Both the position numbers and the translations under genes were made by a program. Positions 592-43,803 of a stretch of DNA of 64,000 bases are shown one piece after another. Each line of letters opens with the position of its first letter. Within the stretch, counting starts at the first letter, position 1. This DNA is from Kudoa neothunni (lineage: Eukaryota > Animalia > Cnidaria). The stretch spans positions 2,293,329-2,357,328 of the forward strand of contig OZ199838.1 in assembly GCA_964304625.1 (NCBI GenBank). The letters run 5' to 3'. The notes below the pieces were generated by a model, which searched no databases, was not told the DNA's origin, and saw only the letters and a program-made list of their open reading frames with translations.

Positions 592-3500
592 TTATAATTC
601 GTAAGCAGTGTCTTTGGATTTTCTTCGGAACACGACCGAACCTATCACCACTAGCAATGCTCCTACGATCGGTACCATTGCGTATACACTAAGAAAAAAT
701 TATTAAAAAACGAATAAACTCTTTACATGTATTTGCTAACAGACCTAAATTAAATTAAATAAAAAAAATGAATTAAAAATACGAATGACTGTTCTTGGCA
801 GCCTCATATTCGTGCTTCTTTTCACTATCTACAGATTTTTTAATACAGCTTATTGTCATAATTTTACTAAAAATATATTAAAAAAGTTAGAAAATTCAGT
901 GTACCCTTTTGCAATCTTTACAATCGTTTTTTCAAAGATATCGTATATATCAATGTTGGTATATTCACTTTTTATATTTTGTCCTTCTGCTAATATTTAA
1001 GAAACAAAATCATCCATACAAATTTACTAAAATAATTAATTAAAATCATATAGTTTAAAAATGTTTCATTACCCTGAAGGTTGTGATATTTTCGAGTCTA
1101 TATTACATAATATAATTAATCAACAAGAAATAATAACATATATATTAATTTTATATTACACGGAATCTCGTGAATTTTATATTTCGAGAAATCCTTTACT
1201 TTCACACTCAACCTATAATCTTTTTTCCTGGATAGTCCGTTGATACCGATAAGACAACCATTGGATGAACATCCTTCTTCATCATTACACCAAAAAACTA
1301 TTGGTTTTTGATTTTCATCATCTGTTTTTTCGTGCAACATAAAGGGGCATTTCGAAGTTGTCGATTTATCAGTAAACAATACATTAATTGCTATACCATT
1401 ATCACCATAAGATGTATAAGTAACCGATGTATCGACATTAGCTATAGGCTATTATATCATAATAAAATCCAAAATTTATTACTAGTAGTAACTTCAAATA
1501 TTCTTGGTTTTTTACCACCAGATGGCTCCACAGTAACATCATAGGTTACCCCCAATTCTAGGTTAACAATTTTGAATGGGCTGTCACATTTATTTTCACA
1601 GGCTCCCATTCCTTCACAAGAAGCCATAAACTTGGCATTTGGGTCACCTTTTTTTTTTAGATAAATTCTACATACTGGAAGCGAATCGTGTTTTTGAAAA
1701 GGTGTAACAGTAACATTTCCCGCCTTTATAGATATTTGAGAAGTTGAATCTGTTAACTTTTCCTCACCAGCTAAATAAATCTAATATTATTATTATTATA
1801 AGCTAAACTTACTCGTTCTAAAGGAAATTTTTTTGATATAACCGTTTGTCACACCAAAGTTTCTAACTGTTACTGTAATTATATAACTGGTATCAGCTGT
1901 TAGGCTGGTAATCGAATATGACTCCTCACAGTTAATGTCACATTCACCTCCAGTACAAAGAGCTCTTTTTTCAGTAGATATCGTATTTGCTTTAGAAATA
2001 TTAATTGTGCATTCCTGATTATTATTTTCTGTGTCTATCTTCTTGTAATTTGCAAGCCCCGTAAGTCTAACACCTGTTCCTGTTATGTCTGTGATATTAA
2101 AGCCAATATCGTTCCCTACAAAATTATATTTATATTTCTAAGTTTCAATTACTTCTAAAGTATTGTTTGAAACCAGTCGTATCATATCTTCTTCTAACAA
2201 TCACACCAACATTTTGATGGTCTCCTGTGAAGTCCAAAATAGAATCTTGACAAAGTTGATAGCAACCATTCTCATTATTTTTACATGCGTTCAAAACTTT
2301 GCTCGTTTGATCCACACCAGCATCATCCACCTGAAATATACTGATATGGCACATCTCGTCATTATATTGGCCAGGAGAAAATGTAATTTTCAGTTTATTA
2401 TTGGTATTTTCAACAGCTGAAATAGAATAAATAACCTCTGACCTTAGAGGAATAGTGCTATTCAATAAGGTGGTATTTGTGAAGTAGTAAATTCCTGGCC
2501 ACATAAGTGTTGAGTTAATGTTATAATAACTCATGTGTCTATCAACTAAGAAATTGGCCGACTTTGTTTCAATTCTATCTGAGTATCTGGCAACATTAAA
2601 TTCGGAGTTTTCGGTATTGCTAAATGAGTCTACTTGCCCGTCAGCATACACTTCCCATTCGGTTTTTGAATTTGTTTTATAGGAAAAAGTAACTTTATCA
2701 TCAGTGTTGGTGATAGAATAAGTATGCTTTTGGTTGTAATCTAAAAACATCGAATTTTAATGCATCAATAATGATGTATTTAGAAATGTATTATAATGTA
2801 AAATAACGAAGAATATTTATTACAATTACCCATATTAATTGGAAAAACTCTATTTTTTTTGCATGATTCCGCATCATTATCGTCTTTACCATAACATACT
2901 AAGAGATAACGATCAATTTTAGAATTAATGTATCCAATCTCAACATTTACGGCCGTGCAGTCAGTTAAGCATAAGTTATTTTTAGTATTCGAAATACAAG
3001 GTGGCTTCACAAAATTAGGGTCTTCTTCAAAATTTGATAGTTTTAGGACACATTTATTACCATCTGGAAAATCTGATAGTTTAATGTGGAATTTCGTAAT
3101 ATCTTTATTAGATTGTTGTTCAAATTTTTGATATAGTTTTCCACGTCGGTAAAAGGCTAGTCACAATGTTAAAAAAATTATTTATATTTGTTTTACCTGG
3201 AATTTCTAATTTAAATGGGGGTGATTTTTTATTTACATATAACATTAATCTGTAATTATGTTTTCTATTATATAAGCCTGAACCAAACTGAATATCACTG
3301 CATTTCTTTTTATTTTTGTTTGATGCTTCACATTCAACGCAGGACTGTTGTATATTTGTTGGTGAAGCTAAATAATCAATTAAAGGATTAGTTACTATTA
3401 TTATTATTACTGTTTCGTTCTTTATACATATAAAACTGATAATAACACTCCATAGAGCCATCGTTAGCGATAATGCTTGTCGGTATTATTTTGAGATTAT

Positions 3501-6500
3501 TTCCTGTTGAATCAGGTGAAATTTTGAATTGAATCGCATCACCAGCTATTTATAATTATTGATGAAATTATAATTGGAAAATACTTGTTTTCTGTTTTTC
3601 AAGAGTATGAACCTTATAGCTGCCGCTGGGTACAATCTTAATATCATAGTTGGCACCAGAATACAAACCAATGATAGTAAATTCTGAGTTACACTTTTTT
3701 ACACACAATTCCTTTTCTGAGCATATAGCTGGATAATAATATAATTTTCCATGTTCTCTAACGTAAATTGAGCATGTTATCGTTGAAACCGTAGAAATTG
3801 ATGTTAGTGTGAATCCAGTTGTTGTGGGCGTAAACGATATCGTCTTACTAGAAAGAGCATTTGTTTGATCTATATATGTGAAATAATTTTCTGAAACTAC
3901 ATAAAATACCGGTTTTATGATAGAAGTATTTTCTTGGTGAATAACTTGGTATATTTTTCAATGATATCATAATATCATTTGCTAAATAAATGGGGTTTGG
4001 TGAAATATTCATTACTCCAATGCTGCAAGATGTAGGGTCGTTAACAGTTTTCCTACCAGTTTCGCTAATTAATGGAGCGTATACATTCCATGATTTTAAT
4101 TCACACGTTACAGTCGATCCAGCACTAACAAGTTGACCATCTTCGTCCTTATTGTTACCGCTAATATTAACTTTGATTTTACTATCAAATGTAGTAACGG
4201 AAGTATCATTGCCATGTTTCACTAGAATATATATTCATATTGCTTATAATTTAATCTATTACATATATAAACGTTATTTTGATAGCCAACAATAGGTTCC
4301 ATTCCAAATTTGAGAACACGTATTTTTACTGCTTTCACTTCTATGGGAATATCTCCAAACGTAACGTTACTGCATAAACTGAAAATGCAGTTTGCATTAT
4401 TATCGCAAGTATTTGAGAAAAATCTATTAGAAGATGATGCAGTTGCGTCAATCCATTCAAATGTGCACATTTTAGAAGGTTCTCCATTAACCAACTTAAT
4501 GGTAAGATTGCTACTTTCATCATTCACCCCCAATTCATAATAAAATCTATTAAAGACTGGTGCATTGGTTTTCACAAATGTATTGTCATAGAAGTAATGA
4601 AAGTCAAAATATTTAGGACAACTTATGTAATAGTCTTCAACTAGTTCGTCAAATTGAAATGAGCAACTATCCGTATTACAAGGTGGTCCCGACGTAACTT
4701 TGGTGAAGGAACCTAGCTTCTCATCATCCTTATATCCATTGCAATTTAGAGAACACTTATTAACACCTAATTTTATCTTATCCTTATCCAGTTCAGCAAT
4801 ATGGACTATTTCCTCGAAAAAATCTTAACAAAATTATATTATTGTAACAAAAGAGATTTACCTATGTAGTACGAAAAGACCTTTCCTGCAGTGAATTCGA
4901 TTTGTGGTAGTGGCGTCAGCGCATCGGTTAGTAGCTCTGGTGTCTCTTGTTTTTCCCTCTCTTGATTTTGATTTTTCTTCCCATCTTGTTCGACTTCTCT
5001 TTCATTAGGCCCTTTAACAACCAAACTAGGATCCGCTCCTTTTTCTGGACCTTCTTGTGACCTATCTCGTCCAACTGGTGGCGCTAAGACTTTTGCTTTC
5101 GCCATTAATGACTTTAATGGATAGGTTTTGTTTCCGGAATCATAATCTGTATTAACTATTTCTCCAACAGACATTTTAGCGATAACTCCATCAACCAAGC
5201 CTGATTTAGAAGTAGCTATGGGAGGGGGTTTAGAGTCTGTATAACTTACCGAAATGTAATTAGGCTTTTTTCCGCTATTAAGATCAATAATAAATTCTGT
5301 TTTGAGCTGGTCACAAGTTTTTTCATTTAACGAACTGTCACCAACACTAACGTATGCAGATAAATCATTGTCAGACTTTTTAATTGTGCATTTTTTATCA
5401 CTTTTCAGCAATAAAGCACCTGTAAATTTCATCTTGTATTTACTTAGTGCTTTATCATATATTAGAATCATTTCGCCTTTCTCTTCCTCAGCATTTCCTA
5501 ATTAAATATATTTAAAGTAAAATTATTTATTTATTTATCAACTTGTTATTTCTTTTCTTTCTGGTTTTGCATGGTCTCCATTTATCATGACTAGTTCATA
5601 CACAACTTCTGGGCCAATATAAGTCCATGGAATGTCCAACGTTTTTGATGCACCTATTGTTTTAACTCCAAGATTGCAATCGATATTCAGACAATCCAAT
5701 ATAATCTTATTGGAATCTTTTTCCAATAGAGTATAACGCCAAGAACTCCCAAGATTTCCTTCATTAATAGCAGATATAGTGAGAGTCGTCTTTTTTTCAG
5801 AAGATTGCACCGGTTCAGATATAGTAACAACGACTCCATTAGCTATTTACATTAAGCAACATTTAAATTATTTTAAAAATTACTTGAAACGGATTCACTC
5901 TCTGCACATGTGTAGCCTTTGGAGCAGATAGTTATTTTGTAGCTTGTTATAGGATCCAGGTTTATAATGGTGAACGCACTTGTACATACGTCCAGACAAA
6001 AAAATTTTTTTGAATTCTTTTCACACGTAGCAGGAAATTTGGATGCCTCTTCTCCTTCAATAGAATAAAACAATTCGCATCTTGCGTCATTATTATTAGA
6101 TCCAGCAGGAAAAAGACTAGATGGAGTTAAATTTAACTGAGTGTTTACACCGCCAACAGGGGTTGGTATAATTTGTTTTTCATTATTAAAAATAGCCCCT
6201 ATTCAACATTTAAATACATTTCTAATAACCGTTTTACCTTTTGTTTTGAAATAAAAATATCGGTGGTAATGATTCACTTCGGAAGAATCTACGATGTTTA
6301 GTCCCGTTATTTTCATTTTTAAAATGTATTCCGTTAACGGTTTAAGTTCTGTTATCGTTTTTGAAACGAAAGAGATACATCCATCCGTGCATGCTACATC
6401 ATCCCCGACAGTTTCTATGCCCATAAATTTCTCTATTAATTTGATTTCTTTGATTTTTGCTTCTTTCACTGTCGATTTTAAATCTTCATTTTTATTTAAT

Positions 6501-7666
6501 TCTGAAAGACTAATCGTAACTTGATTATTTTGTTTATCCGAAAACGCATCAGCGGGTTGTTCATTTCGAACTACATAAATTTATAAAAATTGTAATAAAC
6601 TTAAGGAATACATGTAACAGTTTGAATAAATTCTTTTGCACTTATTTTCCCGACTGATTTTACAAGTACTTGAGCAAAATTCAAATCATATTCGTAGAAT
6701 AATGTCGCCTTGTAACAAGGTTGAAGACACGGGCCAGCTTTATTCCTTGTAGAACAATAAGATGAAAAGTGTGAGTCGTTAATATGCTTTATTCCAAAGT
6801 AACACAACTTGGATGGTTCGGGATTTTGGAGTATTATTGTGAAATAATGCTTATTATTATTATTTTTTGATTTTGACCCAGTTGCAATAAACCAATCTTC
6901 ATCAGGTTTTTTGGGATTCAGAAATATTTCAGGTGATTTATCATTGAATTTGACGATATATTTTGGTTTATATGATTTAGAATTAAATGTAATAGGTTTC
7001 TCAGTGTAGAAATCGTTACTTGCAGTACTAGTATGTTCCTCATTAGAGTCAGATTTGAGAGTGAATCCCTTATCAATTTTTGTCCTAACATGCACAATAA
7101 ATTGGCCAGTTGTTTTCTGTACTCTTAATGATGATTTAATATACGTATCTATCAAAAATTTTTCATTAATTTCATGTGTAATCAAATTACCTTTGAATTT
7201 ATAAACTTTCTTTAAGGGGCAAATTTTGACACCTTTCTCATCTACTCCTTGACACCACCTAATATATTTCATTTCCTTAATTTCATCCCTACTGAATTTT
7301 AATTCAACATTTTTACAATCATAGATGCATCTTTCTGAAGCGGAATCATCTTTAGCATCAGCATCTGTTATAACAGTAGTGCACTTCGGAATAGTTTTAA
7401 GTGTTGAAGTCTCGCTATCATAATATTGTAGGGCACATTTTCTGTAGCTATTTTGAATGTGGTAACCAGAAAGAGTAACAACATATTTATTTTGAACAGG
7501 TGAAAAACTTAAGTTCATTATATTATTATCAATGTCTTGAGTAGAGATAAATGTATTCATTATTGCTAATCAATATTTAAAATATGAAATACTTGAAGTG
7601 ATTACCTGAAAAAATAATCAAATATAATGATGTAAAAAATCTCCAATTCAACGATGTTACTATCAT
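592..7666 (-). CDS. Large (~2,000 aa) multi-exon type I membrane protein with ~18 cysteine-rich FN3/Ig-like modules (surface protein paralog A)
   Basis: Hand-spliced. ATG at 7666 gives signal-peptide-like MIVTSLNWRFFTSLYLIIFS(A)IMNTF across a 40-nt intron (7566-7605). Successive exons are joined by ~39-45 nt phase-1 GT-AG introns (e.g. 7149-7190, 6571-6611, 6199-6237). FN3-like tyrosine corners: ITELKPLTEY, IINLDPITSY, IIGLYSGANY, ITSLTADTSY, IVNLELGVTY. Last exons give SVSKYIVYAMVPIVGALLVVIGSVVF-RRKSKDTAYEL*, stop at 594-592. Threading at about 990-1160 is ambiguous. Confidence 0.85.
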
Positions 7667-7909
7667 TTTTGAAGATTTTATGAAACAGATAATACATTTA
7701 TTCACGAAAGATATTTATATTAACATATTATAATAAGTCGTAAATCGTTTTCATTTAATCCGAATAATGACAAATTCAATATTTAATAAATACAATAGTT
7801 ATTAATGGATGAAACTAGAATATCACTTTTAATTCAAAGATATAATTGTTGTGGAAAGCAATATTTCATAAGAACCAACTTATATAATTGGATTAACGAA
7901 ACTGTAAAG

Positions 7910-10227
7910 CAGTGTTCCCAACCTTTTTTTTAGACGTGACCCATATTTTTTTCAAAAAAATATCCTGTGACTCACGTTAATATTGTAAATGCTTAATCGA
8001 ATTTAACATTAACAATTTTAATTTTTTGATAATATTTATATTCGATATTATATATAATAAAAATATTATGATTGAAACAGTACACTTTTATAATAATTAT
8101 TTTTAATTTATTAATTTAAAAATTTTATTTAGACTTTTTAGCTCGAATAATTATTTTTAAATATTATTATGAAACCGTCAAGCTTGTCTTATGTCGACTT
8201 ATCACTCTTGCTTTTTAATAATCACCGCTGGTTCATTATATTTAATTAATGTTTTAAATATAATATTTCATTTTAATGATTATTTTTGGTTTTTTTGACC
8301 CGATGGTATCATCTAAAGTTACAAACTACTAGAATTTAATAATTTTTCGTTTCAATATTCAATGCAACGAACACAATTTGTTTATATATAATTTCTTTTT
8401 ATTCGAAAAAGTATGAACAAAACTGTAGCATATTTTCTTGTATATTCAATAAATTTAAATGTATATCAATTTCGTCCGAATATAACTCACCATTACCTAA
8501 TATCAATATTTTTTAATACTTCTGGTATTTTAAACAAAATTAATTCAGCGAAAGAATTTTTTTGCTTTTAATTACAGAAAATTAATAATAAAGGAATAAA
8601 TATATTATTGTACGTGGATTAAATAGAAAATTCAATGTATTAAAGATTATTTTGTGGTTCAATCTAATATTTAAAAAATCAATAATAACAATTATAAACT
8701 ATTAATGTAATACTAGTATCTATTTGATGAAGGTATGCGTAATCACATTAATAAATAACACACCAGTTTGGTGTAGCATTGTTTGACCGGCATCTATTTT
8801 AATATAACATTAATTATATTGTTTGCTTTATATAAAAAATATTTAAACAAAAAACATTGTTATTTATTTTTAACGACTTTAATAAAAAATTTACGATGTT
8901 TAAAATATTCAATCTAAATATAGGAAAGTTGATCATTTAATTCAGTAAGGAAATCAAATATAATATCCACAGCAGGATTATATATAGCAGCAGTTAGAAA
9001 ATTTACGGTTTTATTAAAATTTTAAATGAGACAACATTACTACGTCTCTAAATTATTTTGGTTTATAATTTTTTATTAATTTTAGAGGTTCTGACAAAAT
9101 ATCAAATCATTATTTTCCATTGGCTGTCATGATGATTTAATTTTCTCAATTAAATAAATTACGCAAAATCAAAAGTAGATTTAAAATATGTGGATAAAAA
9201 TTTATGTGCAATTCCATGTTATTTATAATTACTCATTTAAAACTTTTTTTAATTAAAGATAATATATATTTTATTACTTTATTAGATTTTGATGTCAATA
9301 AAATGTCTTTTTAATTGAATATTTTATTAATTAAATTTATATATATATTAATTTTCAGGTTTGTTAAATATACTATTTAAAAAATTTATTACGTCGATTA
9401 TAAATAACATGACTGACATTTAAAGATGGTAAAAAATATAGTTAGGATGTGCAAATTATATTGTCATGAAACGTCTACAAACACATTATTTTGTATAATA
9501 AAAATCTTTAATTTCATATGAATTGATAATATTACTTAATATAATTCGTTCTGTATGAGAATTCGAGGCGAGTAATGCTTTCAGTGTCTAGATTTGAGTT
9601 ATTAAATGGACGAATGAATTGAATTATTAGAAAATAACTTCAAGTTTTAATATCTAATTTAAGTATAAAGTTTACTTTTTAAACATACTCGTCTCACTTA
9701 AATATCTTGTGAATAATCTTATTTAAGAATTAAATAATTAAAACAAACTATGAAGTCAACCCGCTATGTGCCACAGAATCAAACGAGTCCAAGTAATACA
9801 TGAATAGTTACGTGTCTGAAATTTAATGAATAGAAAAATTAACTCTCATCTGTATCAGACTTACAAGTTAATAAATTATTCGTGAGCACCAAAAAACGAA
9901 CGAAAGGGTGAGTATTGATTGATCGGAACACGTGTTGATTATTTGGGGTCGTATGATAAATTAAGTTTTTACTCTTTTCCATATTGAAATGTGCGATGTT
10001 ACTCATAAAACAACAATATGTAACTTAATTCAACATAATATTTATAGTAAATCAATATAAATCGAGTCCAAAAGTTAAAATAACATTTTCTAACCTGAGG
10101 GTATTCTACACGGCATGGTTCTGCGTTTTCTTGCGCCGTCCAAATTAGTCAAAAAAATTTTCACGACCCACAAAAAATCCGCCATGACCCATATGTGGGT
10201 CATAAGACACCAGTTTGAGAAGCACTG
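7910..10227. mobile_element. Non-autonomous hAT (Charlie-like) DNA transposon
   Basis: Termini CAGTGTTCCCAACCT (7910) and AGTTTGAGAAGCACTG (to 10227) are imperfect inverted repeats, with subterminal GACCC/GTGACCC motifs. The flanking 8-mers ctgtaaag and ccgtgaaa match 5/8 (eroded TSD). No transposase ORF. Confidence 0.65.
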
Positions 10228-10805
10228 CCGTGAAAATAATTCGTTATAATCATGGTTTTAATCAGATTATATGGTGTGGATTTTAATGATTCGCGCGTGC
10301 AAGTCACACAGCAAAGCTAATGTACGTTTTAATAAAAATCATATAAAAGCAAGTGCCAAGGATTTAAATTATTTTTTTCTACGCGAAAGAATTATTTCTT
10401 TAGATAATGTCACTTTCCACAACAATGGTGCATGCTCGAAGATATAGGATTAATTTTATTCCTATTAGTTTTCTGCTATATGGCGAATAATCCACAAAAA
10501 ATTTTCAACAAAAATAATTGTATTTTTTCGAAAATATCACATAGATATCAAATTGTTTTTTATCAAACTCAAAATAATCGATCATTGCCGTGGGTATACC
10601 TATTGTTTTTACCTCTTTCATGATGAAATTAAATTTGAATTAATCGTTAATAGTGGAATTTTCATACTAGTAAGTATAAGTTTATTCACACTGCTATGAA
10701 TTAGGATTAAGTTCACTTATTATGTCAAATTAGTTACACAAATAAAGGTTTATTTATGTAAACTTTGTATTATTTATTCAAATACTCTTAATTTACTTTG
10801 GATTT

Positions 10806-10885
10806 AAAATGACCTTGACCTACTCAAGGCTTTAGCCTACTTGGCCGGATAAGGAAGCCCATACGAAGCGGGGCTTTTGCGCTAG
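10806..10885 (+). mobile_element. Helitron 3' end (hairpin + CTAG)
   Basis: aaaatgaccttgacctactcaagg...aagccc-atacgaagcg-gggctt-ttgcgCTAG|T. A near-identical end occurs at 38611-38666. Confidence 0.6.
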
Positions 10886-11169
10886 TATGTAATATGATTT
10901 ATTTCCTTCGAAGATCTCTATATTGTTACGATAAAATGTGAATAATTGAAATTTAGATTGCCACAAACATTACACTTTGTTTTTAAAGAAATTGTGTATT
11001 CATCGTTGGAATACGTCATATGGAAATAAGTTTTTAAATGTGAGTCCTATAATAGAATAGAAAATAATAAATAAAATGTTTCAACCACTGTTGGAAGAAA
11101 AAATCATTTTGAAATAAAAACATTCTGACAGGACTTAAAATAAAATATTAATTTTTCTACAGTGTTGGC

Positions 11170-31771: not shown

Positions 31772-33959
31772 ATGAATATATTACTGTTGGCAGGTTTACT
31801 GTTAAACCAGGTGGTAGGAGGTAATTTTGATAAAATTAATTATGTTTAAAATCACGATTCGTTCCCTATTACGTACAACATGTAGCACGTTGTTGGTGTG
31901 TTCACCGCAAACAGGTTAATTTGTTGAATATAGGGTATTCAAAAGTAGTCTACAGCAATCCAAACAATCAGAAAGTGCTGTCAGTTACCAAAGGGGAAGA
32001 ATTTGTGGTGAGTTGGAATTTGGATGTGAAGGACAAAGGTTATCTTCACACTCGCATGATTTTACGCCACCAAGCTCAGTCAACTATAATCAGCAAATTT
32101 GATCACAAAAATTTTTTTATCTACAACAGTACCTATCAGAGAAATGTTGCGGATATTGAGCGAACACAAATAAAGTTAACGTCTACATCATTCGAATTGG
32201 ATGAAGTGTTGTTTTCTATTGAGAATAGTTATCGGGTGAACGACACTGCTACAAATGTGGAAGTGTACGATTACATACCAATATTTGTTATCGGTAGGTT
32301 TTATTCTATCACTCATTTGACAATAGATATTGTAATTTATTAATTTTTTATTGTAGCAAAGCCGCTCATCGACTGTCAGGACAATCAGCGATTTGTTGAC
32401 AACACACTCATTATAGAATGTACCGTGAAGTCGAAACCTGAAGCTGATATCAATGTGGGATTTCAAATGATGCACAGTGGTTTTAATACAACCAAAGAAA
32501 CTCAATTGGATAGTGGTGGATTCTCGATTGTGAATTTGATGATACGGTTTCCGTTGAATGTTTATTATCTCAATAAGATGTTGTTTGTATCGGCATCTGT
32601 GGGGAAATTTCATGAGATGATCAATGTGACTATTAGTTCGAAACGTAAGCGAATATACAATTTTTGCCGAATTTTTATCATAAATTCTAGTGCCTCCTTT
32701 TAACGTGAAATTATTTGTGGACGAGGACAACTCCCCCGAGCAAAATATTAGTGTCTATTCGTCTGACAGATCAAAAGTGGTGGTGAGATGTTCGGCGGAC
32801 ACTTTTTCCGGTCAAGTTCAATACACAATCAAAGCACCTAATAGAAAAACCCTCAACGATGAGCAGTTCGTGATTGATAGATTCGATGAGGCGGCTCACG
32901 TTGGCACATGGGAATGTAGTGCCAAGAATGAATACGGCACGGTGAAGTCGGATTCGATTGTGGTTAGAATTTTGGAGGAAAAACCTTCCATACCAATCAT
33001 CAAAATTAACCATCTCATCAACTCAACCAATACTTTCTGTGTTGATCTACTTGACATGATAACAGTGAGTTGTATGGTTATACATAGTAAACCATTCGAT
33101 AACAAAAATTCTATTCGATACACACTTCAAATGATCAACAGTGGATCCAAATACAACAAAACTACCAATGGACATGGGAATTTTGATATAGCTTTCGACG
33201 AAAGCTATCATGAGAATATCTACGCTTGTAGAGCTGAGAATGAAGTTGGTGTGGGTTCGCCTGCTATTTTCTATTTGTACAAAAACAAGGTTTTAGGTTG
33301 GTTTAGTCGTTATTAGTTGGAAACTTTTGTAACGGAGAATGTTTTTAGGATCTTCATCAATCAATTTCATGAAAACTATCGAAATCCATTCCACCTACAT
33401 GGGAATTATGTGTTTTTTGACTTCGTTGTTAGTGGTTTTTGCCGTGATATTGATTGTGAAACTGAGACATCGAAGTATTTCCATTACTGAAACAACTTAA
33501 TCAAACTATAACTAACTTTCTAATTATCAGCATTATTTCTATAGCTAATCGTATGCTATTGTGTGGTTTATGTTATGGAAACTCGACAGCGTCTGTTCCA
33601 GGTCATTCTATATCGTCAACTGTTACATCGTAATTTAAATATTATCATTGCGTATTTTTATATTGCATTGTTTTAGGCGCCAATTAGAAGCAAGCACTGA
33701 TGTATTAAACTTTTAAAAAGCCACATTTAATAACTCGTATCATGTAGGATAATAAAAAATTTATGGATTCGTTCGAGTTAAGTGATCAATCAAATCCTAC
33801 CATCTATGAGAAAGACGCTCATAAGAAGAACGAACAAACCGACCGAAAGTAATTCTTTATAAATCTTTAATGTTTACGCAATTCCGCAGGGATAAGTCAG
33901 TAACCTCTACCTCAAACGATCTCCATGGGAACATTGACGAAACTGCTCATCTTCTTTAG
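31772..33959 (+). CDS. Immunoglobulin-superfamily type I membrane receptor/adhesion protein (~4 Ig-like domains)
   Basis: Signal peptide exon MNILLLAGLLLNQVVG (31772-31820). Ig motifs: VVVRCSAD...HVGTWECSAKNEYG and ITVSCMV...HENIYACRAENEVG. TM segment YMGIMCFLTSLLVVFAVILIV-KLRHR. Several short cytoplasmic exons end DETAHLL*, TAG at 33957-33959. Confidence 0.85.
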
Positions 33960-34153
33960 TTAGTCATTGTTGTATTTTCTATTTTTTTTATTTCTCGAAG
34001 CTGTTAAATATGTGTGCCATATAAAAATATTCGCATTTATCTATAAAGTCGATCCAATAATACAAACATATCAAATTCAATGTAAATAAGACAGACAGTA
34101 ACAGTAGAACATATAACGATAATAATATTGGTAGTGATAAATTTGAGGGGTCG

Positions 34154-36412
34154 TCAAAGATGAGAAAGTTCTTCCAAATAGGCGCCAAAAAGTTTGATCT
34201 AAATTAACTGCAAACACTAAAACAACAATAGAGTTACACCACAAAAAAAGTTGTATTTGTCGATTTTCTCGTTCTGGGAATGAGCACCATCATCCGAACG
34301 GCCAATCGACAACAGAAGAACGTTCTTCTTAAGAATACTATCAAACCAAGTGGCCACAGGAATCGATCCGCCGATCCTGGTAAAATCGGGAGTCACGCCG
34401 TAAACTAATAGATCAAGTCAAATGAAATGAAATGAATAATGTTGTTGTGAAATAAAGGCGTGAAAACCTTTTTCGCATGCTATCTTAGCTGAAACGTAGT
34501 TAGGATGGTGGATATCGGTCACCCAACCGGGATCCGCATGTGAACAGAATAAACTGATAGCGTTTGAACTATCGCGTTGAACGACGAGGTTTTCGATATA
34601 ATTTTTCACCAGTTCAACGGTTTTGTCAGCTTCCATATGAGGAACAAGCCGAATCGAAAACTTCCCGATCACCTACTCATGGCAATGCGATGCATGTGTT
34701 TGTAAAGATCTAAATTTACTTTTCTGGGGATAACAGTCTTGTCTCCACATCCATCAAAAGATCCCTCAACGCCTAACGGAATTTGGCAAAATATTTACCT
34801 ACACGTTCACACGTGTAACTACCGTGAATGGATAAGGAAGGATATCGCCAGTTGTTCATTAGTAGTGATTCTTTATCATCACAACTTAGCTTACTGGCTC
34901 CTGTATAGGTTTTAATTTCTTCCTAGATACAACAATCATGATAAAGACAGAAGGTTCGCTATCAAAATCTAATATCTAATGAACTTACCATGTCGCAATC
35001 AATAGGTTTATATGTGGCAAATTCTTCATCGGTCAATTTATCCACCTGATCATATATTCCAGGTATAACAATCTTGCCTTTACAATCAACCAGTTTCGAC
35101 AGAAAATACATGAGATCAATCATTGGCTCGTTTCTAAAGAAACAAATCAACCCATTCAGTTTATCTGTTCAGGTCGAAACGTACACCATTCCACCATATA
35201 GACCTGAATGTAGATCGCATTTGAACCCTGCCACTTCCAAATGGAAATAGGCAGCTCCTCTATACCATAATCGAATTATAATTGGGTTCAACTATACTAA
35301 CACATACCGTAGACCATAGGATATGCATGGTTTTCTATTACCCAGCCAATAGGTATCACAAATACACACAAAATCAACATCCTACAAGGAAATACAGGCG
35401 ATCAGTAACTGAACCAAATAATAAATGAGCGATTAGTTACAGCAAAAAATTTATTTTTCTCATTCTCTATCAGTTCAATCATACCAATACTTCCTGATTC
35501 TTCCATAGCCTCAAAGCAAACCTTATCAACGTATTGGTTAGTTGATGAATGTGGATAGTTGAAAACCCAACAATATTCAATACTAAGCACTAAGCAATTA
35601 CTTTGACATTAATGCTGGGGAATGCTTTGAGACTATCTAACACTTTTAAGGCGCACAACAAACCAAAAACTGGACCCTAATTTAACGTATATTGTAATTC
35701 ATATTTCATATATAGAATATAGGCAGGATAATTTAAATTCAGATCCAAAACTACGTACTTTGTCATCCGATGCGCCTCTACCAATCAAACAATCTTTATC
35801 GTTAACGGTGAGCTGAAAAGGGTCGGAATCCCATCCGTCCTCCTAATTTCGAGTTAACGCTGGAAAAATATTAAAAAAACACTTTTCTAGCCGGTTGAAC
35901 GTCAATGTGACCATATATACAGACCTAAATAGTTTGAAAATCGTTTAAAAGACCTATCTAATCAATCGAGAAAGAGTTTACAGTTTTGTAACTAGGAGAT
36001 TTCATTTTTGAGCCAAGAATTATAGGGGGAACTTCGAGTTTTTCGCCATTGGCAAGAGTCTGAGTTTTACAGGGGTTGGCCATTATTTCAACATCAAAGT
36101 TAAGCTCTCTCAGTTTCTACAAACATTAATTTTTTTATCTCATCCAAAAAATAAGACCGGATTATTACTTTCCCCACAAATTCCACCATCTCAAAACAAT
36201 ACTTTCTAAAAGTATAGTCTCCCGAAACACTAGGTATAGCAATCCATTCTTTAAACTCATCGATAAACTCGTTCTATTCAAAAAATATTTTCACCATGTG
36301 CAACATCATAATAATACTTCTCTTAAATCAATTTCTCTAAAAATAATAATATTAATATAGTTGAAGTACAAAATTGAGCGTACTTTGAAAAAATATCATA
36401 ATTAAATGTCAT
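34154..36412 (-). CDS. CNDP2: Cytosolic non-specific dipeptidase (M20 family)
   Basis: Spliced motifs: EFKEWIAIPSVSG, YGHIDVQP, EDGWDSDPF, GRGASDDK|GPV, FEAMEESGS, DLHSGLYGG, WRYPSLSIH, KFSIRLVP, GGSIPVAT, DDGAHSQNEKI, IKLFGAYLEELSHL*. Many tiny introns. Confidence 0.93.
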
Positions 36413-38610
36413 CTTTTATTTTTATTCACAGGGTATTTATTTAACTATCGGTTTTCGTAGATAAATAAAATTCAAGCTAATTTTGAGATGACGATGGCGT
36501 GCTCAAAATGAATTTTTACAAAGAAACGACTTAAAACGACTGTCTCACGCGATTGTTTCAATGTTTCTATTAATATTTTGTTTATTTGTGAAATCAAAAA
36601 CAAATAAAAATGCTCAACTCTACGACAACTTTTTATTTATAATCAAATAGTTGAAAGTATTACCATGCTTCACGACTTTGTTTTGTTTAAAATGATGCAT
36701 TCTTCGTCACATAATGCGTAATAATCAAGTTATTTACTTATTAATTCATTAAGTAAATGAGAAAAAACATCAAAATAACATTAGCGAAACAAAGCGTTAA
36801 ATCTAAGTATACCTGCTATTAAATGTCAAGGCGATTTCTATGCATTATTAATGAATAGTCATGATGATGTAAATATGTGTCTTATTAGGCGAGTAATAAT
36901 AAACCAAAAATTCTATTATTCAAGCAATAGAGAATTTGTTTATTATGTATTCACTTTATAGCGAAGGATTCCGTAATGATGGAAATTAATCGTTAGATTA
37001 CTTATTGCATTGTTTAGTTTTACGAATTTTGAGATAGCAACGTGTAAGTATATTATCGGTTTAATTTTATCTTCACCTTCTCAGCCTACCCATACAGAAA
37101 GTAGTAATTCACTTAATAAATAATATTCCGATGGTACTAGTTTTGACTGTGTTTAATTATTTCTGCCCTCTTAGAGCGAAGAGATCGGGATAAATAATTA
37201 AATGTAACATATTCCAAAGAAAATTAAATATGTATATAGCCTTTAAATAAGAGTTTCTGGGATTACAACTTGTCATCGCTCATGAGTGCATGCAGGTTAG
37301 GATTAAAATTTGGCACTGATTATTCATTATTCTTACGGTTCAGTATAATCCCTTCTTCGGCATACACTATTCTTACGGTAAAGAATATCTTCTAGATTAT
37401 TTCTAAGGTATTGCAAATCTGATTTCATTGATGTGTAAAGCTAGTTTAAATTTATTATTTATGAAGAATTTGTCATGTTATTCTTCACTAGAAATTTCTA
37501 GTGAATATGATCCTTTATATCAGCGATTCTTAACCTTTCTTCTTTGTGGCCCCAATGTGTTCAATAGACTCATCACCTATCCCATTTTGTTTTAATGTAT
37601 AATCCAGCATACATACAAATATTTAAATCCTTTCGTTCACACTGTTCAATTTAATCCTATATTACTATTATTATTAATCTATATACAGTGCAGCATCGTT
37701 AGTTTGTAGTACTTAACTCATATTTGATTATGATTGGTTCAGTGACATAAAGGGTGATATTTTAAGGTTTTAAATAACCTAAATGAAACTTTTTTGAACT
37801 ATTTTAAATATGAAAAACATCTATCGTGTGTAATGCATCTATTCTACGTGATTCGTATTCATTCCTCGTATTATTACGTACGAGCGATGCCGCATTGTAT
37901 GTAAAGTCGTAGTGTCCTTGTCCATGTGCGTGTGTAAGTGCGTGTAAGTGTGTGTACGCACAAATCTTCTCCTTATTCAGGGACTTCCAGTGGTATCTGA
38001 GTTTTCAATATACTCCAAAAAATCCATAATTAACTACAAAAATAAAATGGAACCTTCTGATTGCTCATAAAGTGATGAATTGGTGGTGTAAACGTTTTGT
38101 AAACAGATTACCACTGCACATGGTTTTCTAATGGGTTCAGTGATATGCGTACATAACTCTAATTTATATTATTTAAATACAACTGAAACTGTGAAAATTT
38201 GCTCTTTTCTACTTTTGAACGTATTTAAGACGATCTACAACATTTGTTCGTGCGTAGACTGGGACTTGGTGTAAACGCAGATTTGTTGTTTAAACGGGAG
38301 ATTCATACACGTGAATAAATTATTTACATTGCACGTGTAATTAAAGATAAAAAGTTTTAAATATTTTTACAATAAGCATAAAATAATGTTAGCACGTTAT
38401 AATTAAATAAAACATTGTTAACAAACGTTTAGATTAGTTAGTTCATCGACGGGTTAGTTAAAGTGATTAATCGGCCACATGAGTTGTAGTAACTTATGAT
38501 TGCTGAATGAAAATAAAATCCAATAAAGAAGAAAGTGAGGAAGATCGGGTTATTTCGTACAATACTGTAGTCAAAAGAATGATAAAATAATTACAATTGA
38601 CTTTGAACTT

Positions 38611-38666
38611 AAAATGACCTTGACTTACTCAAGGCTTTTGTCTGCGAATCAGGGCTTTTGCGCTAG
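38611..38666 (+). mobile_element. Helitron 3' end, same family as 10806-10885
   Basis: aaaatgaccttgacttactcaaggctttt...agggcttttgcgCTAG|T. Confidence 0.6.
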
Positions 38667-40918
38667 TATATATAAAAAGTTCTTATGTTTGTCAGTGAGT
38701 GTGTTCGGAGCAGTACGCATGTGCCATGGAGAAACTTTTTTTAAATACAGCTTTTAGTTTGCATTTGAACAGATGATACCTTTAATAAAAAATTTTCTTT
38801 TACTTAGAAGTATAAATATAATCAATATCGTTATCAGAAGTATGGAATTTTATGGCTGTTTTCATCAATTACCAGATTAAGATGTAACTGATTAATATTG
38901 ATGTTTGTTTACTTCAGAGTGATACTCAATTAAAATGAACTTTTACTCACTGCATACGAAGAGAATCTTCCAATTATGGTGTATAATGTTTAGAAATGTT
39001 ACATATGTCAGTTTGGAGTAATTTTAAGATAGATAGATAGATAGATAGTGCCACTAGAGCCATATTTACAAGAGATGTAACACTTCATTTGAAATTTTAA
39101 GCATAACCAAATTATTTAGGATGTATTTTCACTTTTCAAGCGTTATGGATATAGTTAAGCAAAAAAGATTATGATCATTTTAAATAACATACATAATTTG
39201 AGATCTAAGTTGTTACCGTGTTGGAATAATTTGGGTCTCTATACGCATTCCAAAAACGATGTAAGATGTGTGTAGAGTTCTCAAATGATTTAATTTTTTT
39301 GATAACTTCTTAAATGAAAATTTCTTTTTATCAAAAATATCGATTGAGATTGAAACTATATTCGTCTTTTCGATAAGTTTTTACTCATTTTCTGGTTTTC
39401 TTAAACTTTATTGAAAAATAGCTGCTATCACTAATTCAATAAGTTTCTATATTTGATGAGATAATTTTTTAAACAATGTTTAAGTTTTTAGGAACCTAAT
39501 TATTCCTTATCCCCATACTTTAAGGTTAATATTCAAATAAATATATAATTTTCTACTCGCTAAAAATAATTCATTATGATATAAAAGATGAATGAAAATA
39601 CTCGACACCTAAATCTATACGTTGTTTCAGAATTCATATTCATGATTACTTTTGCGCAAAATACAATCCCTTCTCAATATATGACATGGAAGTTAATAAC
39701 AAATTATTGGTCTATTTGATCTAACTGATATTTTCACAAAGTTTTCGTTAATCTAAGAATAGTTCAATACGAAAAAATTTTTTAGGACGATCAAACTCTA
39801 CGTTTATTTTTAAACGGGTGCATTCCTTCAAGAAAACCAGTTGATATTTAAATATTTTAGCATTACTGTAATTTTTCAAACCAAAAACACCTTTACATTT
39901 TAGATTTAATCGTATTTTGTTGATTAAATTTGTATATTTTTGTTAAAAAGAAAGGTTTCATTTATTAAAAAATGGAGAAATTACGTTAAAATAGTGAATA
40001 CGTAAGTTACCACTCACAGATTATTAAAACCTCATTAACATCCTTTATAAAAGTGCAAAAAAGGGAGTAACAATTAATATTTTTATTTCTGACGCATCTT
40101 TGGTTGATTTTATTTTTTTCTCGTTTGTAGACTAATAATAAATCATGTAACTAGAGGGATTAATTTTTATCGTAAGATTTTGAAAAGAACTGAAAGTCCT
40201 ATTTAAGTTAATTAATGGTTTTATTTAGTGAATAAATGAAGTTTAATCGTTAGTTAAATTGCTCATAAAATTAAGGTCATTATATTTTTGGTCATAATTT
40301 GTAAAATAAACTTAAAAATACTCGTTAATTTCCCTCAATACCTCTATTTATATTTGAATGGAAAGTGCGCTCATAATTTTGTTTTTCTAAATCATCACAT
40401 TGCAAAAATAATGGCAAGCTTTAAAATGCAACAATTAAAATAGAAAAATAAAGTTTACAGGGTTTAACGTGCTAATTAAATTAACTTAATCGTAGAATCT
40501 CTCCATTCAAAAATAAAATTAAAAGTTAAAATATTCCACCACAGTGTCTGGAAAAGTTGGGAATTAGCGCTAGTTACAAACATTAACTCAAAAATTATAT
40601 ATAATTTATACGTTTTGTTTGCTTCCATCATCGTACATTAATTTTTAAATAAGTCGTATAATCAATCTTAAATCCTGGAAATAAACTAAGATTACGACTA
40701 AATAGGTCAAAATTTATATCGTATCATAAAATATATATATATACGTTTGAATATAATTTATTTAGCGGATAGTTTATTTTTAATTATGAATAGTGTATTT
40801 GATTAAATAATATATTAAAAAAAGCGGATCTCCTATATAATGCATCCAATTCATTAAAAATAATAATTTGGTTGACATGAATAGGACGATAACTTTCGTT
40901 AAGGATTATTTAAACAAA

Positions 40919-43803
40919 ATGAAAAATGTTATGTACTCCACGGGAATATTTTTTATCTTCATCTGTAAAATTTTTGTTGTTTGAAATTTTTTAATCCAAA
41001 TTAGTGAAAATTGTACTGCTCGAGACAGAAAAAACACCAAACTCTCTCACCTATAAAGTGATAAAAGATAGTAATACTATGAAGGTTCATTTAATTCTGA
41101 ATGGGGGAGATTATACCTCGTCCAACCACTGCTACGTAAAAAAATCAAACGATAATAATGATAATTTTGAAGATATCGATCCTTGTGTCAATCCAGGCCA
41201 AACTGACGGAGCTAATAATTGCGCTATAATTTGCAATAAAAGTGATCACAAATTAGGTTACGATAAGTTTTCCCCAAGAACAAAGTATATTGGAGTTTAT
41301 TTCGCGAAAACTTCAGCAGAAGCTGTTAAAAAAAGTACAGGCGCGACTGTTTTTGGTTTCGATATACGTAATTCCTTTGTAATTAAGTTTTTTATAAACT
41401 CTTGTAGCTTTACTCGTGAATCCACAAGTTACAATAACTACAAACGATCAAAAATTAAAATTGAGCACAATAACATGTAAAAAGGTTGCATGTCCAATTT
41501 ATTATAAGGACGTCCAATACGCTAACGGAGCAGTTGGAAGTACTTGTGCTGCGGGTAATAATAATAATGAAGTAGAATTCGACGTAATGATTCCACATTA
41601 TGAAATGAAATGCGAAAACTATCCAAGTTTCTTTTATAAACTGCAAAATAAATACACTTTATTGAAGACGGACGTTTATATACCACAATATTATGTGAAA
41701 TTTAATAATACCCTAAAAAATAAATACCTACTTAAATTCACTAATAAATTCCCTTTCGAAATTTGTCGATTTAGTATAAGAGAAGTATTAACTCAAAGCT
41801 CTAATGATTATACATCCAATTGCGGAGGGACAGGCAAAGAATGCTATGCACCTTGTGACAATGTAGAACTCAATTTCAAGGCATCAAAATCAGTTGTTGA
41901 AATATTGATACAATCAAGACATTTTCCATTAAAAAACGAAGACGGCACTTATTCTGGATATATCCAAAAGAAATTCGGTAATTATAATAATTATTACTTA
42001 AATAATGTTTTTTTTAGTTATTAGCGAAGCTATTGATGTAAATGGTGCTGGTGAATTATTATCAGCTCATTCTGCTACCGGTGTTACATTAAAAGTTAAA
42101 TTATTTAATCCAGATACTAGTCCAAAATTCAGTTCATGTACCGTAAGCTACTATGCTGCGGACAAGCCCCCTCCTGTACCTACTACCGCTAACACGAGGG
42201 CGACTTGCGCATCTCAAGATAGTCCGTGTGTTGAAACTTGTGCCGAACCCCTAATAATATCTCGACTTGCTGGCGGAAAACCTTATATTCTTGAAATTGC
42301 CGCATCGACAACAGAAACTGCCAATAATGTCCCTAATGATTTTAAAGAGCATATATTCTTTAGAACTAGTATGTTTAATAAAGTTGATAAAATTTAAACG
42401 ATACTTAGATAATGTAGATGGATCAACATTTCCCGATGTAACTCCCATAATAAAGGATACCTCCTTCACCATCCAAGCGTTGACTGATAAAGGAGCCATT
42501 GCTAATACTGATGTTACTTGCGCGTATTACATTAGTCCCCGCGGAAAGGATGTATATGTTTGTGCAATGTGTGTTGACAGTTATCCTTGCAGGGGATATT
42601 GTAAGGAACCTCAACACATCGTGGGACTAACTCCAGGAACAGAGTATGACCTCAAGGTTGTTGCTCACGACAAATATGGATTCAAAGTTCACCAAGTCAC
42701 AACAGGTATTTAATTAATGAAATAAATTTAAATAATTAAATTTTAAGGGATGTCAACACTTACACTTGAGCATCAATTTTTGGACAGAGGTTTCAAAGTG
42801 ATAGGCTCTTTGACTTCCCCCTATCCTGGAGCTGTGTGCCAATACAAAATAAAACTTAAGAAAGGCGAAACTTTTGATATGTTGTACGAATGCCCAGCGC
42901 CAACTAAAGCTGGTAGGACTGGAAATTCTGTTCTCGAACCAACGCTCTCTAAAATTGGAGTGGCTAGATCAGCAGACAAACAATCAACAGACGTTAAGCC
43001 TCCAGCTACTAATGTTAAAATCCCACCTTGCCAAACACTACCCTTATGTAGTGGTATCATATTTAGTGAAGGATACGAAGCGGAAAAAGAATATCAGGTT
43101 TTAGTGACCGCTGTAGGCAGGTCTATTGAAACCACAATAAATATACCTAAAAGTAAATTTTCTCACAAAAATATATAAAAGAAAAGAATTATCTATATTA
43201 TTAAATCTTATCTCTTTATGTTATATTGAGTTTTTTTCTAGACCCACTTCCTACAGCTTCGAATGACCCCAAAAAACAAATAATAATAGTGATCACACGC
43301 GATAAAAAAACCTTAAATGTGAAAACCACCTTGCCTCTTGGTGTGGATGAAAATTCGTTATGCAAATGGAAATTAACAAACTCTGAAGATTCGGCCAATC
43401 CAATTGTTAAAAAATGCATGGTTGTTGGTGAAGGTTGTACCAAGTTTCCTCCATGCAAAGAATTCACCATTGATGAAGTTATGGACACTAACAATTACCA
43501 CCTAGCTGTATTCCATAGTGAAGATGCGAGTATCCTTGGAATTGGCGAAATTAACAGAGGTAAATAATAAATGTTTGGTCGACTTTTTAATAATAATGTA
43601 GGTGAAACTTCAAATAAATCAGTGTAACTTCCAATACATGAGTATTATTTCTTTATTAATTTTAGATCAAAAAATACAATGTATTAAAACATGGAATGTC
43701 TGTTTTAATTTAAATATTTAGCATTATTGCAGTTGTAGTTCCAGTTGCTATCGCTGTCATTGGAATCGGAGTTTATTTTGGATACTCGAAGAACCGGAAT
43801 TAA
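40919..43803 (+). CDS. ~800-aa type I membrane protein with ~7 cysteine-rich FN3/Ig-like modules (surface protein paralog B)
   Basis: ATG at 40919 (an in-frame upstream ATG lies at 40877) gives MKNVMYSTGIFFIFIL|KIVLLET. Phase-1 introns of mostly ~40 nt separate the modules. FN3 motifs: IISRLAGGKPY, IVGLTPGTEYDLKVVA, GYEAEKEYQV. Micro-exons at 43602-43623 and 43666-43680. TM segment IIAVVVPVAIAVIGIGVYFGY-SKNRN*, TAA at 43801-43803. Confidence 0.88.

What the first reader, a model, noticed from the sequence alone, without database searches (positions are those of the whole stretch)
592..43803. Two divergent paralogs of an unrecognised Cys-rich FN3-like type I surface-protein family (592-7666 minus; 40919-43803 plus)
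Seen: both genes encode a signal peptide, a string of Cys-rich beta-sandwich modules, a single TM helix and a very short tail (RRKSKDTAYEL*; SKNRN*), with no enzymatic or signalling domain. They align module by module despite low identity. Example 1: A ITCSIYVREHGKLYIIPAICSEKELCVKKCNSEFTIIGLYSGANYDIKIV vs B VTCAYYISPRGKDVYVCAMCVDSYPCRGYCKEPQHIVGLTPGTEYDLKVV. Example 2: A KIKLGVNKCSLNCNGYKD..FQFDELVEDYYISCPKYFDFHY vs B KLKLSTITCKKVACPIYYKD..VEFDVMIPHYEMKCENYPSFFY. I do not recognise the family. Inference: a lineage-specific, rapidly diversifying surface coat/adhesin or variant-antigen family, analogous in design (not homology) to Plasmodium 6-Cys or Toxoplasma SRS proteins, which would matter for host interaction if the organism is a parasite.
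Basis: partly seen in the sequence, partly recalled or inferred. Interest (0 to 1): 0.85.

Follow-up and report, generated by a model that had tools for sequence, protein, structure and literature searches.

The report
Giant FN3 surface-protein family in Kudoa
The two genes are intact members of a family of at least about 200 single-pass membrane proteins, each a chain of disulfide-stapled fibronectin-III domains, in the tuna-muscle parasite Kudoa neothunni; no paper I searched describes it, and it is the best current candidate for the parasite's unknown host-facing surface.

Summary
Both genes are intact multi-exon genes: signal peptide, a string of beta-sandwich modules (one or two per phase 1-1 exon), one TM helix and a tail of 5 to 11 residues. 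Gene A (592-7666, minus) has 20 exons and 2044 aa. Gene B (40919-43803, plus) has 10 exons and 822 aa.

The modules are true but very diverged fibronectin type III domains carrying four conserved cysteines. This rests on an AlphaFold model (pLDDT 87), only FN3 hits in PDB and the ESM Atlas, and a profile match to titin and fibronectin.

A and B are not a pair. They represent two subfamilies of a huge family. Each of three exon queries gave at least 150 genomic matches (360-480 candidates), so there are at least about 210 genes in a 40 Mb genome. The genome is the published K. neothunni assembly. Gene A is roughly three B-like units in tandem.

Outside this genome only 21 unnamed contig fragments match. 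dN/dS is 0.2-0.6 and highest in the membrane-distal module, so there is no proof of positive selection. No RNA data exist, so expression and antigenic variation are untested.

This scan had already met the family on other windows (s1-692989 and others).

The parts
592..7666 (-). Gene A: A-type (long) family member, 20 exons, 2044 aa, about 19 FN3-like modules
   Evidence: Splice model with one open frame. Five paralogs are collinear exon by exon, E2-E16.
7606..7666 (-). Gene A exon 1: signal peptide (MIVTSLNWRFFTSLYLIIFS)
   Evidence: Hydrophobic N-terminus.
4263..4823 (-). Gene A exon 7: double FN3 module, counterpart of B exon 3
   Evidence: blastp E 4e-7 and hhalign 96.7%. At least 150 matches in the genome, about 60 of them at 52-78% identity.
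3585..3869 (-). Gene A exon 9: four-Cys FN3 module, counterpart of B exon 5
   Evidence: blastp E 7e-10 and hhalign 96.1%.
1160..3156 (-). Gene A exons 12-16: C-terminal unit collinear with B exons 2-5
   Evidence: hhalign pairs: B_E2~A_E12 71%, B_E3~A_E13 68%, B_E4~A_E14 95%, B_E5~A_E15 55%.
990..1159 (-). Unresolved 170-nt stretch. Either one long intron, or a 62-nt intron, a 24-nt microexon (1074-1097) and a nested intron.
   Evidence: Both readings keep the frame. No RNA is available to decide.
592..688 (-). Gene A last exon: TM helix plus the 11-residue tail RRKSKDTAYEL and stop
   Evidence: Kyte-Doolittle hydropathy 2.47. The TM helix and the AY[DE]L end are conserved in five paralogs.
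40919..43803 (+). Gene B: B-type (short) family member, 10 exons, 822 aa, 7 FN3-like modules
   Evidence: Splice model with one open frame. Six paralogs are collinear over E2-E7.
40919..40964 (+). Gene B exon 1: signal peptide (MKNVMYSTGIFFIFI)
41005..41367 (+). Gene B exon 2: membrane-distal module, the most variable one
   Evidence: 41-63% identity to paralogs, against 65-80% for exon 3. dN/dS is 0.5-0.6.
41408..41977 (+). Gene B exon 3: two tandem FN3-like domains with 7 conserved Cys
   Evidence: Alignment A1. AlphaFold pLDDT 75.5. The top Foldseek hits are tandem-FN3 cytokine-receptor modules. At least 150 genomic matches, all with E below 5e-51.
42409..42705 (+). Gene B exon 5: single FN3 domain with the motif C..A-x-C-x5-C-x3-C
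   Evidence: Alignment A2. AlphaFold pLDDT 87.1, pTM 0.78. FN3 hits only.
43602..43680 (+). Two microexons of 22 and 15 nt (43602-43623, 43666-43680) encoding the stalk, with a 42-nt intron between them
   Evidence: This is the only in-frame path I found, by hand, from exon 7 to the TM exon using about 41-42 nt GT..AG introns.
43722..43803 (+). Gene B last exon: TM helix plus the tail (Y)SKNRN and stop
   Evidence: Kyte-Doolittle peak 2.87. Conserved in paralogs as ..YFGY.KN.N*.

Best explanation
SHOWN. Genes A and B are intact representatives of two subfamilies of one very large, Kudoa-restricted family of type I membrane proteins. A-type members are about 2,000 aa with about 19 modules. B-type members are about 820 aa with 7 modules.

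The ectodomain is a rod of diverged fibronectin type III domains. Each domain carries four conserved cysteines, most likely forming two disulfides. Almost every domain, or pair of domains, sits on its own phase 1-1 exon. That layout lets modules be duplicated without breaking the frame, and gene A is about three B-like units in a row. The chain ends in a short stalk built from microexons, one TM helix and a cytoplasmic tail of 5-11 residues. The tail is conserved within each subfamily and is too short to signal.

INFERRED. The proteins sit on the parasite's plasma membrane and act as an adhesin or coat layer at the interface with the fish host (or the unknown invertebrate host). The membrane-distal module would be the ligand- or antibody-exposed tip, since it evolves fastest. 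The repertoire would be diversified by tandem duplication into arrays plus dispersal. The published annotation probably missed the family, because the genome was repeat-masked before gene calling and had no RNA support.
For: Gene models and topology.

FN3 fold: AlphaFold pLDDT 87 and pTM 0.78. All top PDB matches are FN3 domains, TM 0.55-0.68, and the Atlas matches are FN3 too, TM 0.65-0.70. The module profile matches titin at 2e-11 and fibronectin at 6e-7. L73 and Y79 and four Cys are invariant or nearly so.

Family size: at least 150 matches scored out of 360, 480 and 411 candidates. For B exon 3 the weakest scored match still has E 5e-51.

Collinear paralogs with conserved intron positions.

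Coding constraint: dN/dS is 0.2-0.4 across many pairs. Per exon it is 0.5-0.6 for the distal module and about 0.2 for exons 3, 5 and 7.

Taxonomic restriction: 22 hits in 1.84 billion representatives, all unnamed. Nothing was found for A exon 2 or in the Atlas feature search.

Genome identity and masking: the contig sizes, including the 18,219-bp mitochondrial contig, match PMC12239612. That paper states RepeatModeler masking before BRAKER3 and too few RNA reads.
Against: - There is no transcript or protein evidence at all. The four runs that hold the locus are DNA, with introns retained.
- Surface location is inferred from sequence features only.
- Kudoa plasmodia grow inside muscle fibres, where an antibody-facing coat is less obviously needed.
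- No exon shows dN/dS above 1.
- Some copies carry stops: about 5% of the B-type and about 20% of the A-type exon matches.
Confidence: 0.6

Rival explanations
1. The family serves the parasite's own cell-cell adhesion or recognition. Examples would be cell-in-cell contacts during sporogony, fusion or non-fusion of plasmodia, or an allorecognition-like system. It would partly replace the classical metazoan adhesion genes that myxozoans lost.
For: FN3 chains are classic metazoan cell-adhesion modules. The most variable module is the distal one. From my own knowledge, and not tested here: the cnidarian Hydractinia has a clustered family of single-pass allorecognition proteins with sequence-orphan beta-sandwich domains.
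Against: Several hundred copies is far more than housekeeping adhesion needs. The tails are too short for the signalling motifs seen in allorecognition receptors. No expression data are available.
Confidence: 0.22
2. It is a programmed variant-surface-antigen system, in which one or a few genes are expressed at a time and switched to evade fish immunity.
For: The family is very large and lies in arrays, many near chromosome ends. By my own count, about 44% of the B exon 3 matches lie within 1.5 Mb of an end, where 22% would be expected. The exposed tip is variable. A 2026 preprint proposes variant surface proteins in another myxozoan.
Against: There is no evidence of exclusive expression or of a switching mechanism. 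dN/dS is below 1 everywhere measured. Large arrays also lie in chromosome interiors. An earlier follow-up in this scan on a related locus found gene conversion but no switching system (s1-687407, not checked by me).
Confidence: 0.12
3. The copies are a decaying repeat family or an annotation artefact, not functional genes.
For: The published work reports 45.6% repeats and masked them before annotation. Some copies contain stops. A piggyBac-like transposase fragment lies 1.2 kb downstream of gene B.
Against: A and B keep uninterrupted frames through 20 and 10 exons, with canonical splice sites. Eleven fetched paralogs keep exon order and boundaries. dN/dS is 0.1-0.6. Cys, Leu and Tyr core positions are invariant. 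Both subfamilies are conserved in other, unnamed samples.
Confidence: 0.04

Closest known systems
Fibronectin type III domain superfamily (Pfam PF00041 and relatives; titin, fibronectin, Dscam, contactin, neogenin)
   Same: Seven-strand beta sandwich of about 95 aa. The E-F strand signature gL.PgT.Y...V.A has an invariant Leu and Tyr. Profile and fold matches go to FN3 domains only. Each domain sits on a phase 1-1 exon, as in many animal FN3 and Ig genes.
   Different: Four conserved Cys (B strand, then A-x-C-x5-C-x3-C between strands C and E). Every exon scores below Pfam's threshold (15.4 bits against 25). The chain carries no Ig, kinase, phosphatase or other partner domain. The copy number is unheard of for FN3 proteins in so small a genome.
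Class I cytokine-receptor homology module (IL-2R gamma, IL-7R alpha, TSLPR)
   Same: The 190-aa exon is modelled as two tandem FN3 domains, with four conserved Cys in the first. These receptors are its best Foldseek hits (E about 2e-4).
   Different: TM-score is only 0.3-0.45. There is no WSXWS motif and no Box1/Box2 tail. The similarity is at fold level only.
Protozoan surface families (Plasmodium 6-Cys/s48-45, Toxoplasma SRS, Giardia VSP) and the VSP-like genes reported in Sphaerospora molnari (bioRxiv 10.64898/2026.02.11.705288)
   Same: The design: signal peptide, Cys-stabilised modules, membrane anchor, a tiny tail and a large multigene family in a parasite.
   Different: A different fold and no sequence relation. 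There are no Pfam hits, and neither fold search listed a 6-Cys or SRS structure among the matches shown. Cys content is 3%, against more than 10% in VSPs. There is no evidence of switching.
The same family as seen earlier in this scan on other windows (s1-692989 'Huge FN3-like surface family in Kudoa', s1-695904, s1-695905, s1-698950)
   Same: Same genome, the same four-Cys FN3-like module and the seven-module architecture of B-type genes.
   Different: This window adds five things: the long A-type subfamily as a tripled unit, the module-by-module A/B map, per-module dN/dS, the external fragments of both subfamilies, and the link to repeat masking in the published annotation.

Membership tests
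FN3 superfamily | Beta sandwich of about 90-100 aa with seven strands (A, B, E against C, C', F, G) | tested here: met
   AlphaFold model of B exon 5: pLDDT 87.1, seven strands. The Foldseek PDB top 50 are FN3 domains almost without exception, TM 0.5-0.68. Atlas TM is 0.65-0.70 to FN3 clusters.
FN3 superfamily | Sequence signature of the E-F strands (conserved Leu, Tyr corner) | tested here: met
   L73 and Y79 are invariant in 26 modules. The profile matches titin at 2e-11 and fibronectin at 5.6e-7 across exactly these strands.
FN3 superfamily | Pfam PF00041 gathering score | tested here: not met
   The best score is 15.4 bits against a cut-off of 25, on two exons. Most exons have no hit.
Class I cytokine receptor (CHM) | WSXWS motif in the second domain and a Box1 cytoplasmic motif | tested here: not met
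   There is no WSXWS in B exon 3 or its 41 aligned relatives. The tails are 5-11 residues long.
Class I cytokine receptor (CHM) | Two tandem FN3 domains with four conserved Cys in the first | tested here: inconclusive
   The tandem FN3 model has C23, C28, C46 and C68 conserved. TM-score is only about 0.4, and the disulfide pairing cannot be read from the tools.
6-Cys (s48/45) and SRS families | Pfam s48_45 or SAG domain, or the corresponding fold | tested here: not met
   No such Pfam hit and no such structure among the fold matches shown.
Variant surface antigen system | Mutually exclusive expression and switching | not testable with these tools
   No RNA run holds the locus. The runs laid on it are DNA.
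Kudoa four-Cys FN3 surface family (this scan) | Signal peptide, chain of four-Cys FN3 modules on phase 1-1 exons, microexon stalk, TM helix and short conserved tail | tested here: met
   Both genes and eleven fetched paralogs.

The most novel reading that the evidence does not exclude
Kudoa runs a contingency repertoire of several hundred FN3-chain surface genes, with only one or a few displayed at a time (antigenic variation) or used as a self/non-self recognition code. That would be an animal parasite using a protozoan-style variant-coat strategy built from a metazoan adhesion domain. The repertoire would have been hidden from the published annotation by repeat masking.
Probability: 0.12. 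Interest if true: 0.9.

Novelty: new variant of a known kind. Interest (0 to 1): 0.6.

Why it matters
Nothing is known about the molecules at the surface of Kudoa, a genus that spoils tuna and other fish and includes a human food-poisoning agent.

A family of at least about 210 genes would be 4% or more of the gene count in a genome annotated with 5,316 proteins, and its largest gene family by far.

If the published repeat masking swallowed it, the reported 'reduced gene repertoire' and the '45% repeats' both need revisiting.

The family gives concrete targets for antibodies, diagnostics and stage-specific expression studies. It is also a clean example of domain-exon amplification (phase 1-1 FN3 exons) in a fast-evolving animal genome.

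Tried and rejected
- Pfam on 20 exon translations gave only sub-threshold hits.
- Searches for homologues outside the family: the A1 profile against 1.84 billion representatives gave 22 unnamed fragments, one of them (P0022, 549 aa, JGI) an unrelated borderline hit. A exon 2 against 5.8 billion clusters gave nothing. The ESM Atlas feature search gave nothing.
- RNA evidence: no RNA run holds the locus. The four runs laid are DNA contigs with introns retained, and the two 'joints' seen (198 and 238 nt, not GT..AG) are contig artefacts or paralog joins.
Over C1:2526001-2563000, phmmer with the A and B exons and the A1 and A2 profiles hit only a complete A-type paralog on the minus strand, not the plus-strand cassettes. 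No relation is detectable at this sensitivity.
- I tried to resolve the 3' end of gene A by exhaustive path search and by comparison with a paralog. Stretch 990-1159 stays ambiguous.
- A simple scan for nested introns in the two 89-nt introns found none.
- Disulfide pairing could not be read, because the model's coordinates are not exposed.
- The joined (spliced) proteins were translated only inside my scripts, to check frame, hydrophobic ends and Cys counts. They were not sent to any search or folding tool. Every search and fold was done exon by exon, by reference.
Full report
**What is there**

The window is AT-rich (22-37% G+C) and has few long ORFs, as expected for an intron-rich eukaryote.

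On the minus strand between 592 and 7714, and on the plus strand between 40919 and 43803, stop-free segments follow one another at gaps of about 40 nt. Each gap holds exactly one in-frame GTA..(T/C)AG intron of 37-45 nt.

Joining the exons gives gene B with 10 exons and 822 aa, and gene A with 20 exons and 2044 aa. Each is one uninterrupted frame.

Both proteins start with a hydrophobic signal-like peptide. Both end with a single strongly hydrophobic helix and a tail of 5 residues (SKNRN) or 11 residues (RRKSKDTAYEL).

All module exons are phase 1-1.

In B the stalk is encoded by microexons of 22 and 15 nt.

In A the stretch 990-1159 is either one 170-nt intron or a 62-nt intron, a 24-nt microexon and a nested intron. 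Both readings keep the frame.

The joined proteins were translated only inside scripts, for frame and composition checks. No search or fold used a joined sequence; everything was done exon by exon, by reference.

B exon 5 against A exon 9 gives blastp E 7e-10. B exon 3 against A exon 7 gives E 4e-7. With small profiles built from paralogs, hhalign gives 96-97% probability for both.

The module map is:

| B exon | A counterpart (hhalign probability) |
|---|---|
| E2 | A_E12 (71%) |
| E3 | A_E7 (97%), C-terminal part of A_E2 (94%), A_E13 (68%) |
| E4 | A_E14 (95%) |
| E5 | A_E9 (96%), A_E15 (55%) |
| E6 | A_E11 (58%) |

So gene A is about three B-like units in tandem. Its last unit, E12-E15, is collinear with B E2-E5.

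'Cys-rich' is an overstatement: Cys is 3.1% in A and 3.5% in B.

**What the modules are**

Pfam finds nothing above threshold. The only suggestive hits are fn3 and the DSCAM Fn3 family, at 15-20 bits on the E-F strands.

An alignment of 26 modules of the B exon 5 type (A2) shows C37, C54, C60, C64, A52, L73 and Y79 invariant or nearly so. The motif is C..A-x-C-x5-C-x3-C....gL.PgT.YD.KV.

AlphaFold on that alignment gives pLDDT 87.1, pTM 0.78 and seven strands.

- Nearly all of the best Foldseek matches in PDB are FN3 domains: fibronectin FN6, neogenin, contactin, Dscam and monobodies. TM is 0.55-0.68.
- The ESM Atlas matches are FN3 clusters at TM 0.65-0.70.
- The A2 profile matches titin at 2e-11 and fibronectin at 5.6e-7 through the E-F strands.

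The 190-aa exon (alignment A1: 42 sequences, seven conserved Cys) is modelled as two tandem beta sandwiches at pLDDT 75.5. Its best matches are tandem-FN3 cytokine-receptor modules, at E about 2e-4 and TM 0.3-0.45. There is no WSXWS motif and no signalling tail, so this similarity is at fold level only.

The modules are therefore real but strongly diverged FN3 domains with a four-cysteine staple. The disulfide pairing could not be determined.

**How many copies, and where**

The window lies at C1:2293329-2357328 of a 40,260,978-base assembly in four contigs. Three contigs measure 17,154,348, 12,040,071 and 11,048,340 bases, which leaves 18,219 bases for the fourth.

These figures equal the published Kudoa neothunni assembly from yellowfin tuna: 40.2 Mb, N50 12.0 Mb, three chromosomes and an 18,219-bp mitochondrial contig (PMC12239612).

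Three single-exon queries each returned the maximum of 150 scored matches:

| Query | Candidates | Note |
|---|---|---|
| A exon 7 | 360 | about 60 matches at 52-78% identity, the rest B-type at 21-34% |
| B exon 3 | 480 | the weakest scored match still has E 5e-51 and about 47% identity |
| B exon 5 | 411 | |

That makes at least 150 B-type and about 60 A-type loci, so at least about 210 genes. The real number is probably clearly higher.

By my count, about 5% of the B-type and about 20% of the A-type exon matches contain stops.

The copies lie in arrays. Examples are C3 at 0.08-0.46, 0.78-0.95 and 4.57-4.93 Mb, C2 at 7.86-8.17 and 9.79-9.87 Mb, and C1 at 16.3-16.9 Mb. By my count, about 44% lie within 1.5 Mb of a chromosome end, against 22% expected, but large internal arrays exist too.

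A and B are the only members in this window, so they are dispersed singletons.

Six fetched B-type genes are collinear with B over exons 2-7. Five fetched A-type genes are collinear with A over exons 2-16.

The TM helix and tail are conserved within each subfamily. A-type ends ..RRK..D..Y[DE]L*, and five of the six B-type copies end ..YFGY.KN.N*.

**Are they genes?**

No RNA could be obtained. The only runs that hold the locus are four DNA data sets of one sample, with introns retained. The genome paper also says that too few RNA reads mapped to Kudoa.

The coding status therefore rests on four points:
- Frames stay open through 10 and 20 exons.
- Exon boundaries are conserved in 11 paralogs.
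- Core residues are invariant.
- dN/dS (Nei-Gojobori) has medians of 0.20-0.37 in every dS bin for two modules.

Per exon, between B and its nearest relatives (dS 0.3-0.6), dN/dS is 0.5-0.6 for the distal exon 2. It is about 0.4 for exons 4 and 6 and about 0.2 for exons 3, 5 and 7.

This is a gradient with the tip fastest, but no exon exceeds 1.

**Distribution**

The A1 profile against 1.84 billion representative proteins found 22 hits. Twenty-one are unnamed, exon-sized ORFs on short ENA or Logan contigs. The contigs I traced come from runs SRR31175926 and SRR33849685 and from metagenome assembly ERZ28624939.

These are genomic DNA of related organisms. They have the same tiny introns, although some intron positions are absent. 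They cover both subfamilies at 26-68% identity and keep exon order.

The A/B split therefore predates those species. I could not name them.

**Literature**

No paper in the library combines Kudoa with fibronectin type III.

The K. neothunni genome paper does not mention gene families or surface proteins. It masked the genome with RepeatModeler and RepeatMasker before BRAKER3, and reports 45.6% repeats and 5,316 proteins.

A multigene family of this size is exactly what de novo repeat finders mask. That it was missed for this reason is my inference and is not tested.

A 2026 preprint proposes unrelated VSP-, RIFIN- and STEVOR-like surface families in Sphaerospora molnari.

**Earlier notes of this scan**

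The family was already met on other windows. Note s1-692989 calls it a huge FN3-like surface family of about 200 or more members with seven modules. My independent counts and fold agree with that.

This window adds:
- the long A-type subfamily;
- the A/B module map;
- per-module constraint;
- the external fragments;
- the masking explanation.

The FN3-like cassettes of a putative adhesion GPCR nearby (s1-704270) are not detectably the same module type.

**Verdict**

The most likely reading is a host-interface adhesin or coat repertoire with a variable tip. A parasite-internal recognition role and a true variant-antigen system remain open. The junk-repeat reading is largely excluded.

Noticed in passing
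window 45031-45414 (+): ORF fragment with a clear piggyBac-type transposase domain (Pfam DDE_Tnp_1_7, E 5.6e-20), 1.2 kb downstream of gene B's stop. It could relate to how this singleton B-type copy was dispersed away from the arrays.
   Followed up: no
window 990-1159 (-): The only long 'intron' of gene A (170 nt). It can also be read as a 62-nt intron, a 24-nt in-frame microexon (1074-1097) and an intron nested in the donor of the next one (G|GTAATG...TTTTAG|TAAATT...TATTAG). This is the layout that earlier notes of this scan called stwintrons in this family.
   Followed up: partly
window 2741-2829 (-) and 43153-43241 (+): One intron in each gene is 89 nt, about twice the otherwise very uniform 37-45 nt. 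A simple scan found no nested-intron structure.
   Followed up: partly
window 4931-5083 (-), inside gene A exon 6: A charged, Pro/Glu/Lys-rich low-complexity linker interrupts the module chain. Exon 6 is the least conserved exon among A-type paralogs (41-44% identity).
   Followed up: partly
window 32690-33313 (+): A 208-aa ORF in a locally G+C-richer stretch (32-36 kb, 36% G+C) has weak Ig-domain hits (Ig_5 3e-4, I-set 9e-4). It may belong to another beta-sandwich surface gene unrelated to A and B.
   Followed up: no
window 53632-54012 (+): Exon of an ATP synthase gamma-subunit gene (Pfam ATP-synt, E 1.6e-19), an ordinary housekeeping neighbour.
   Followed up: no
G000:C1:2555365-2561667 (-) (loci L066, L068): A complete A-type paralog, collinear over exons 2-16 with gene A at 44-62% identity.
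   Followed up: yes
L042 and L044 (Logan contigs of run SRR33849685): In a related, unnamed organism several module boundaries that carry introns in K. neothunni are continuous ORF (for example B exons 2 and 3 fused). This shows intron loss or gain within the family.
   Followed up: partly
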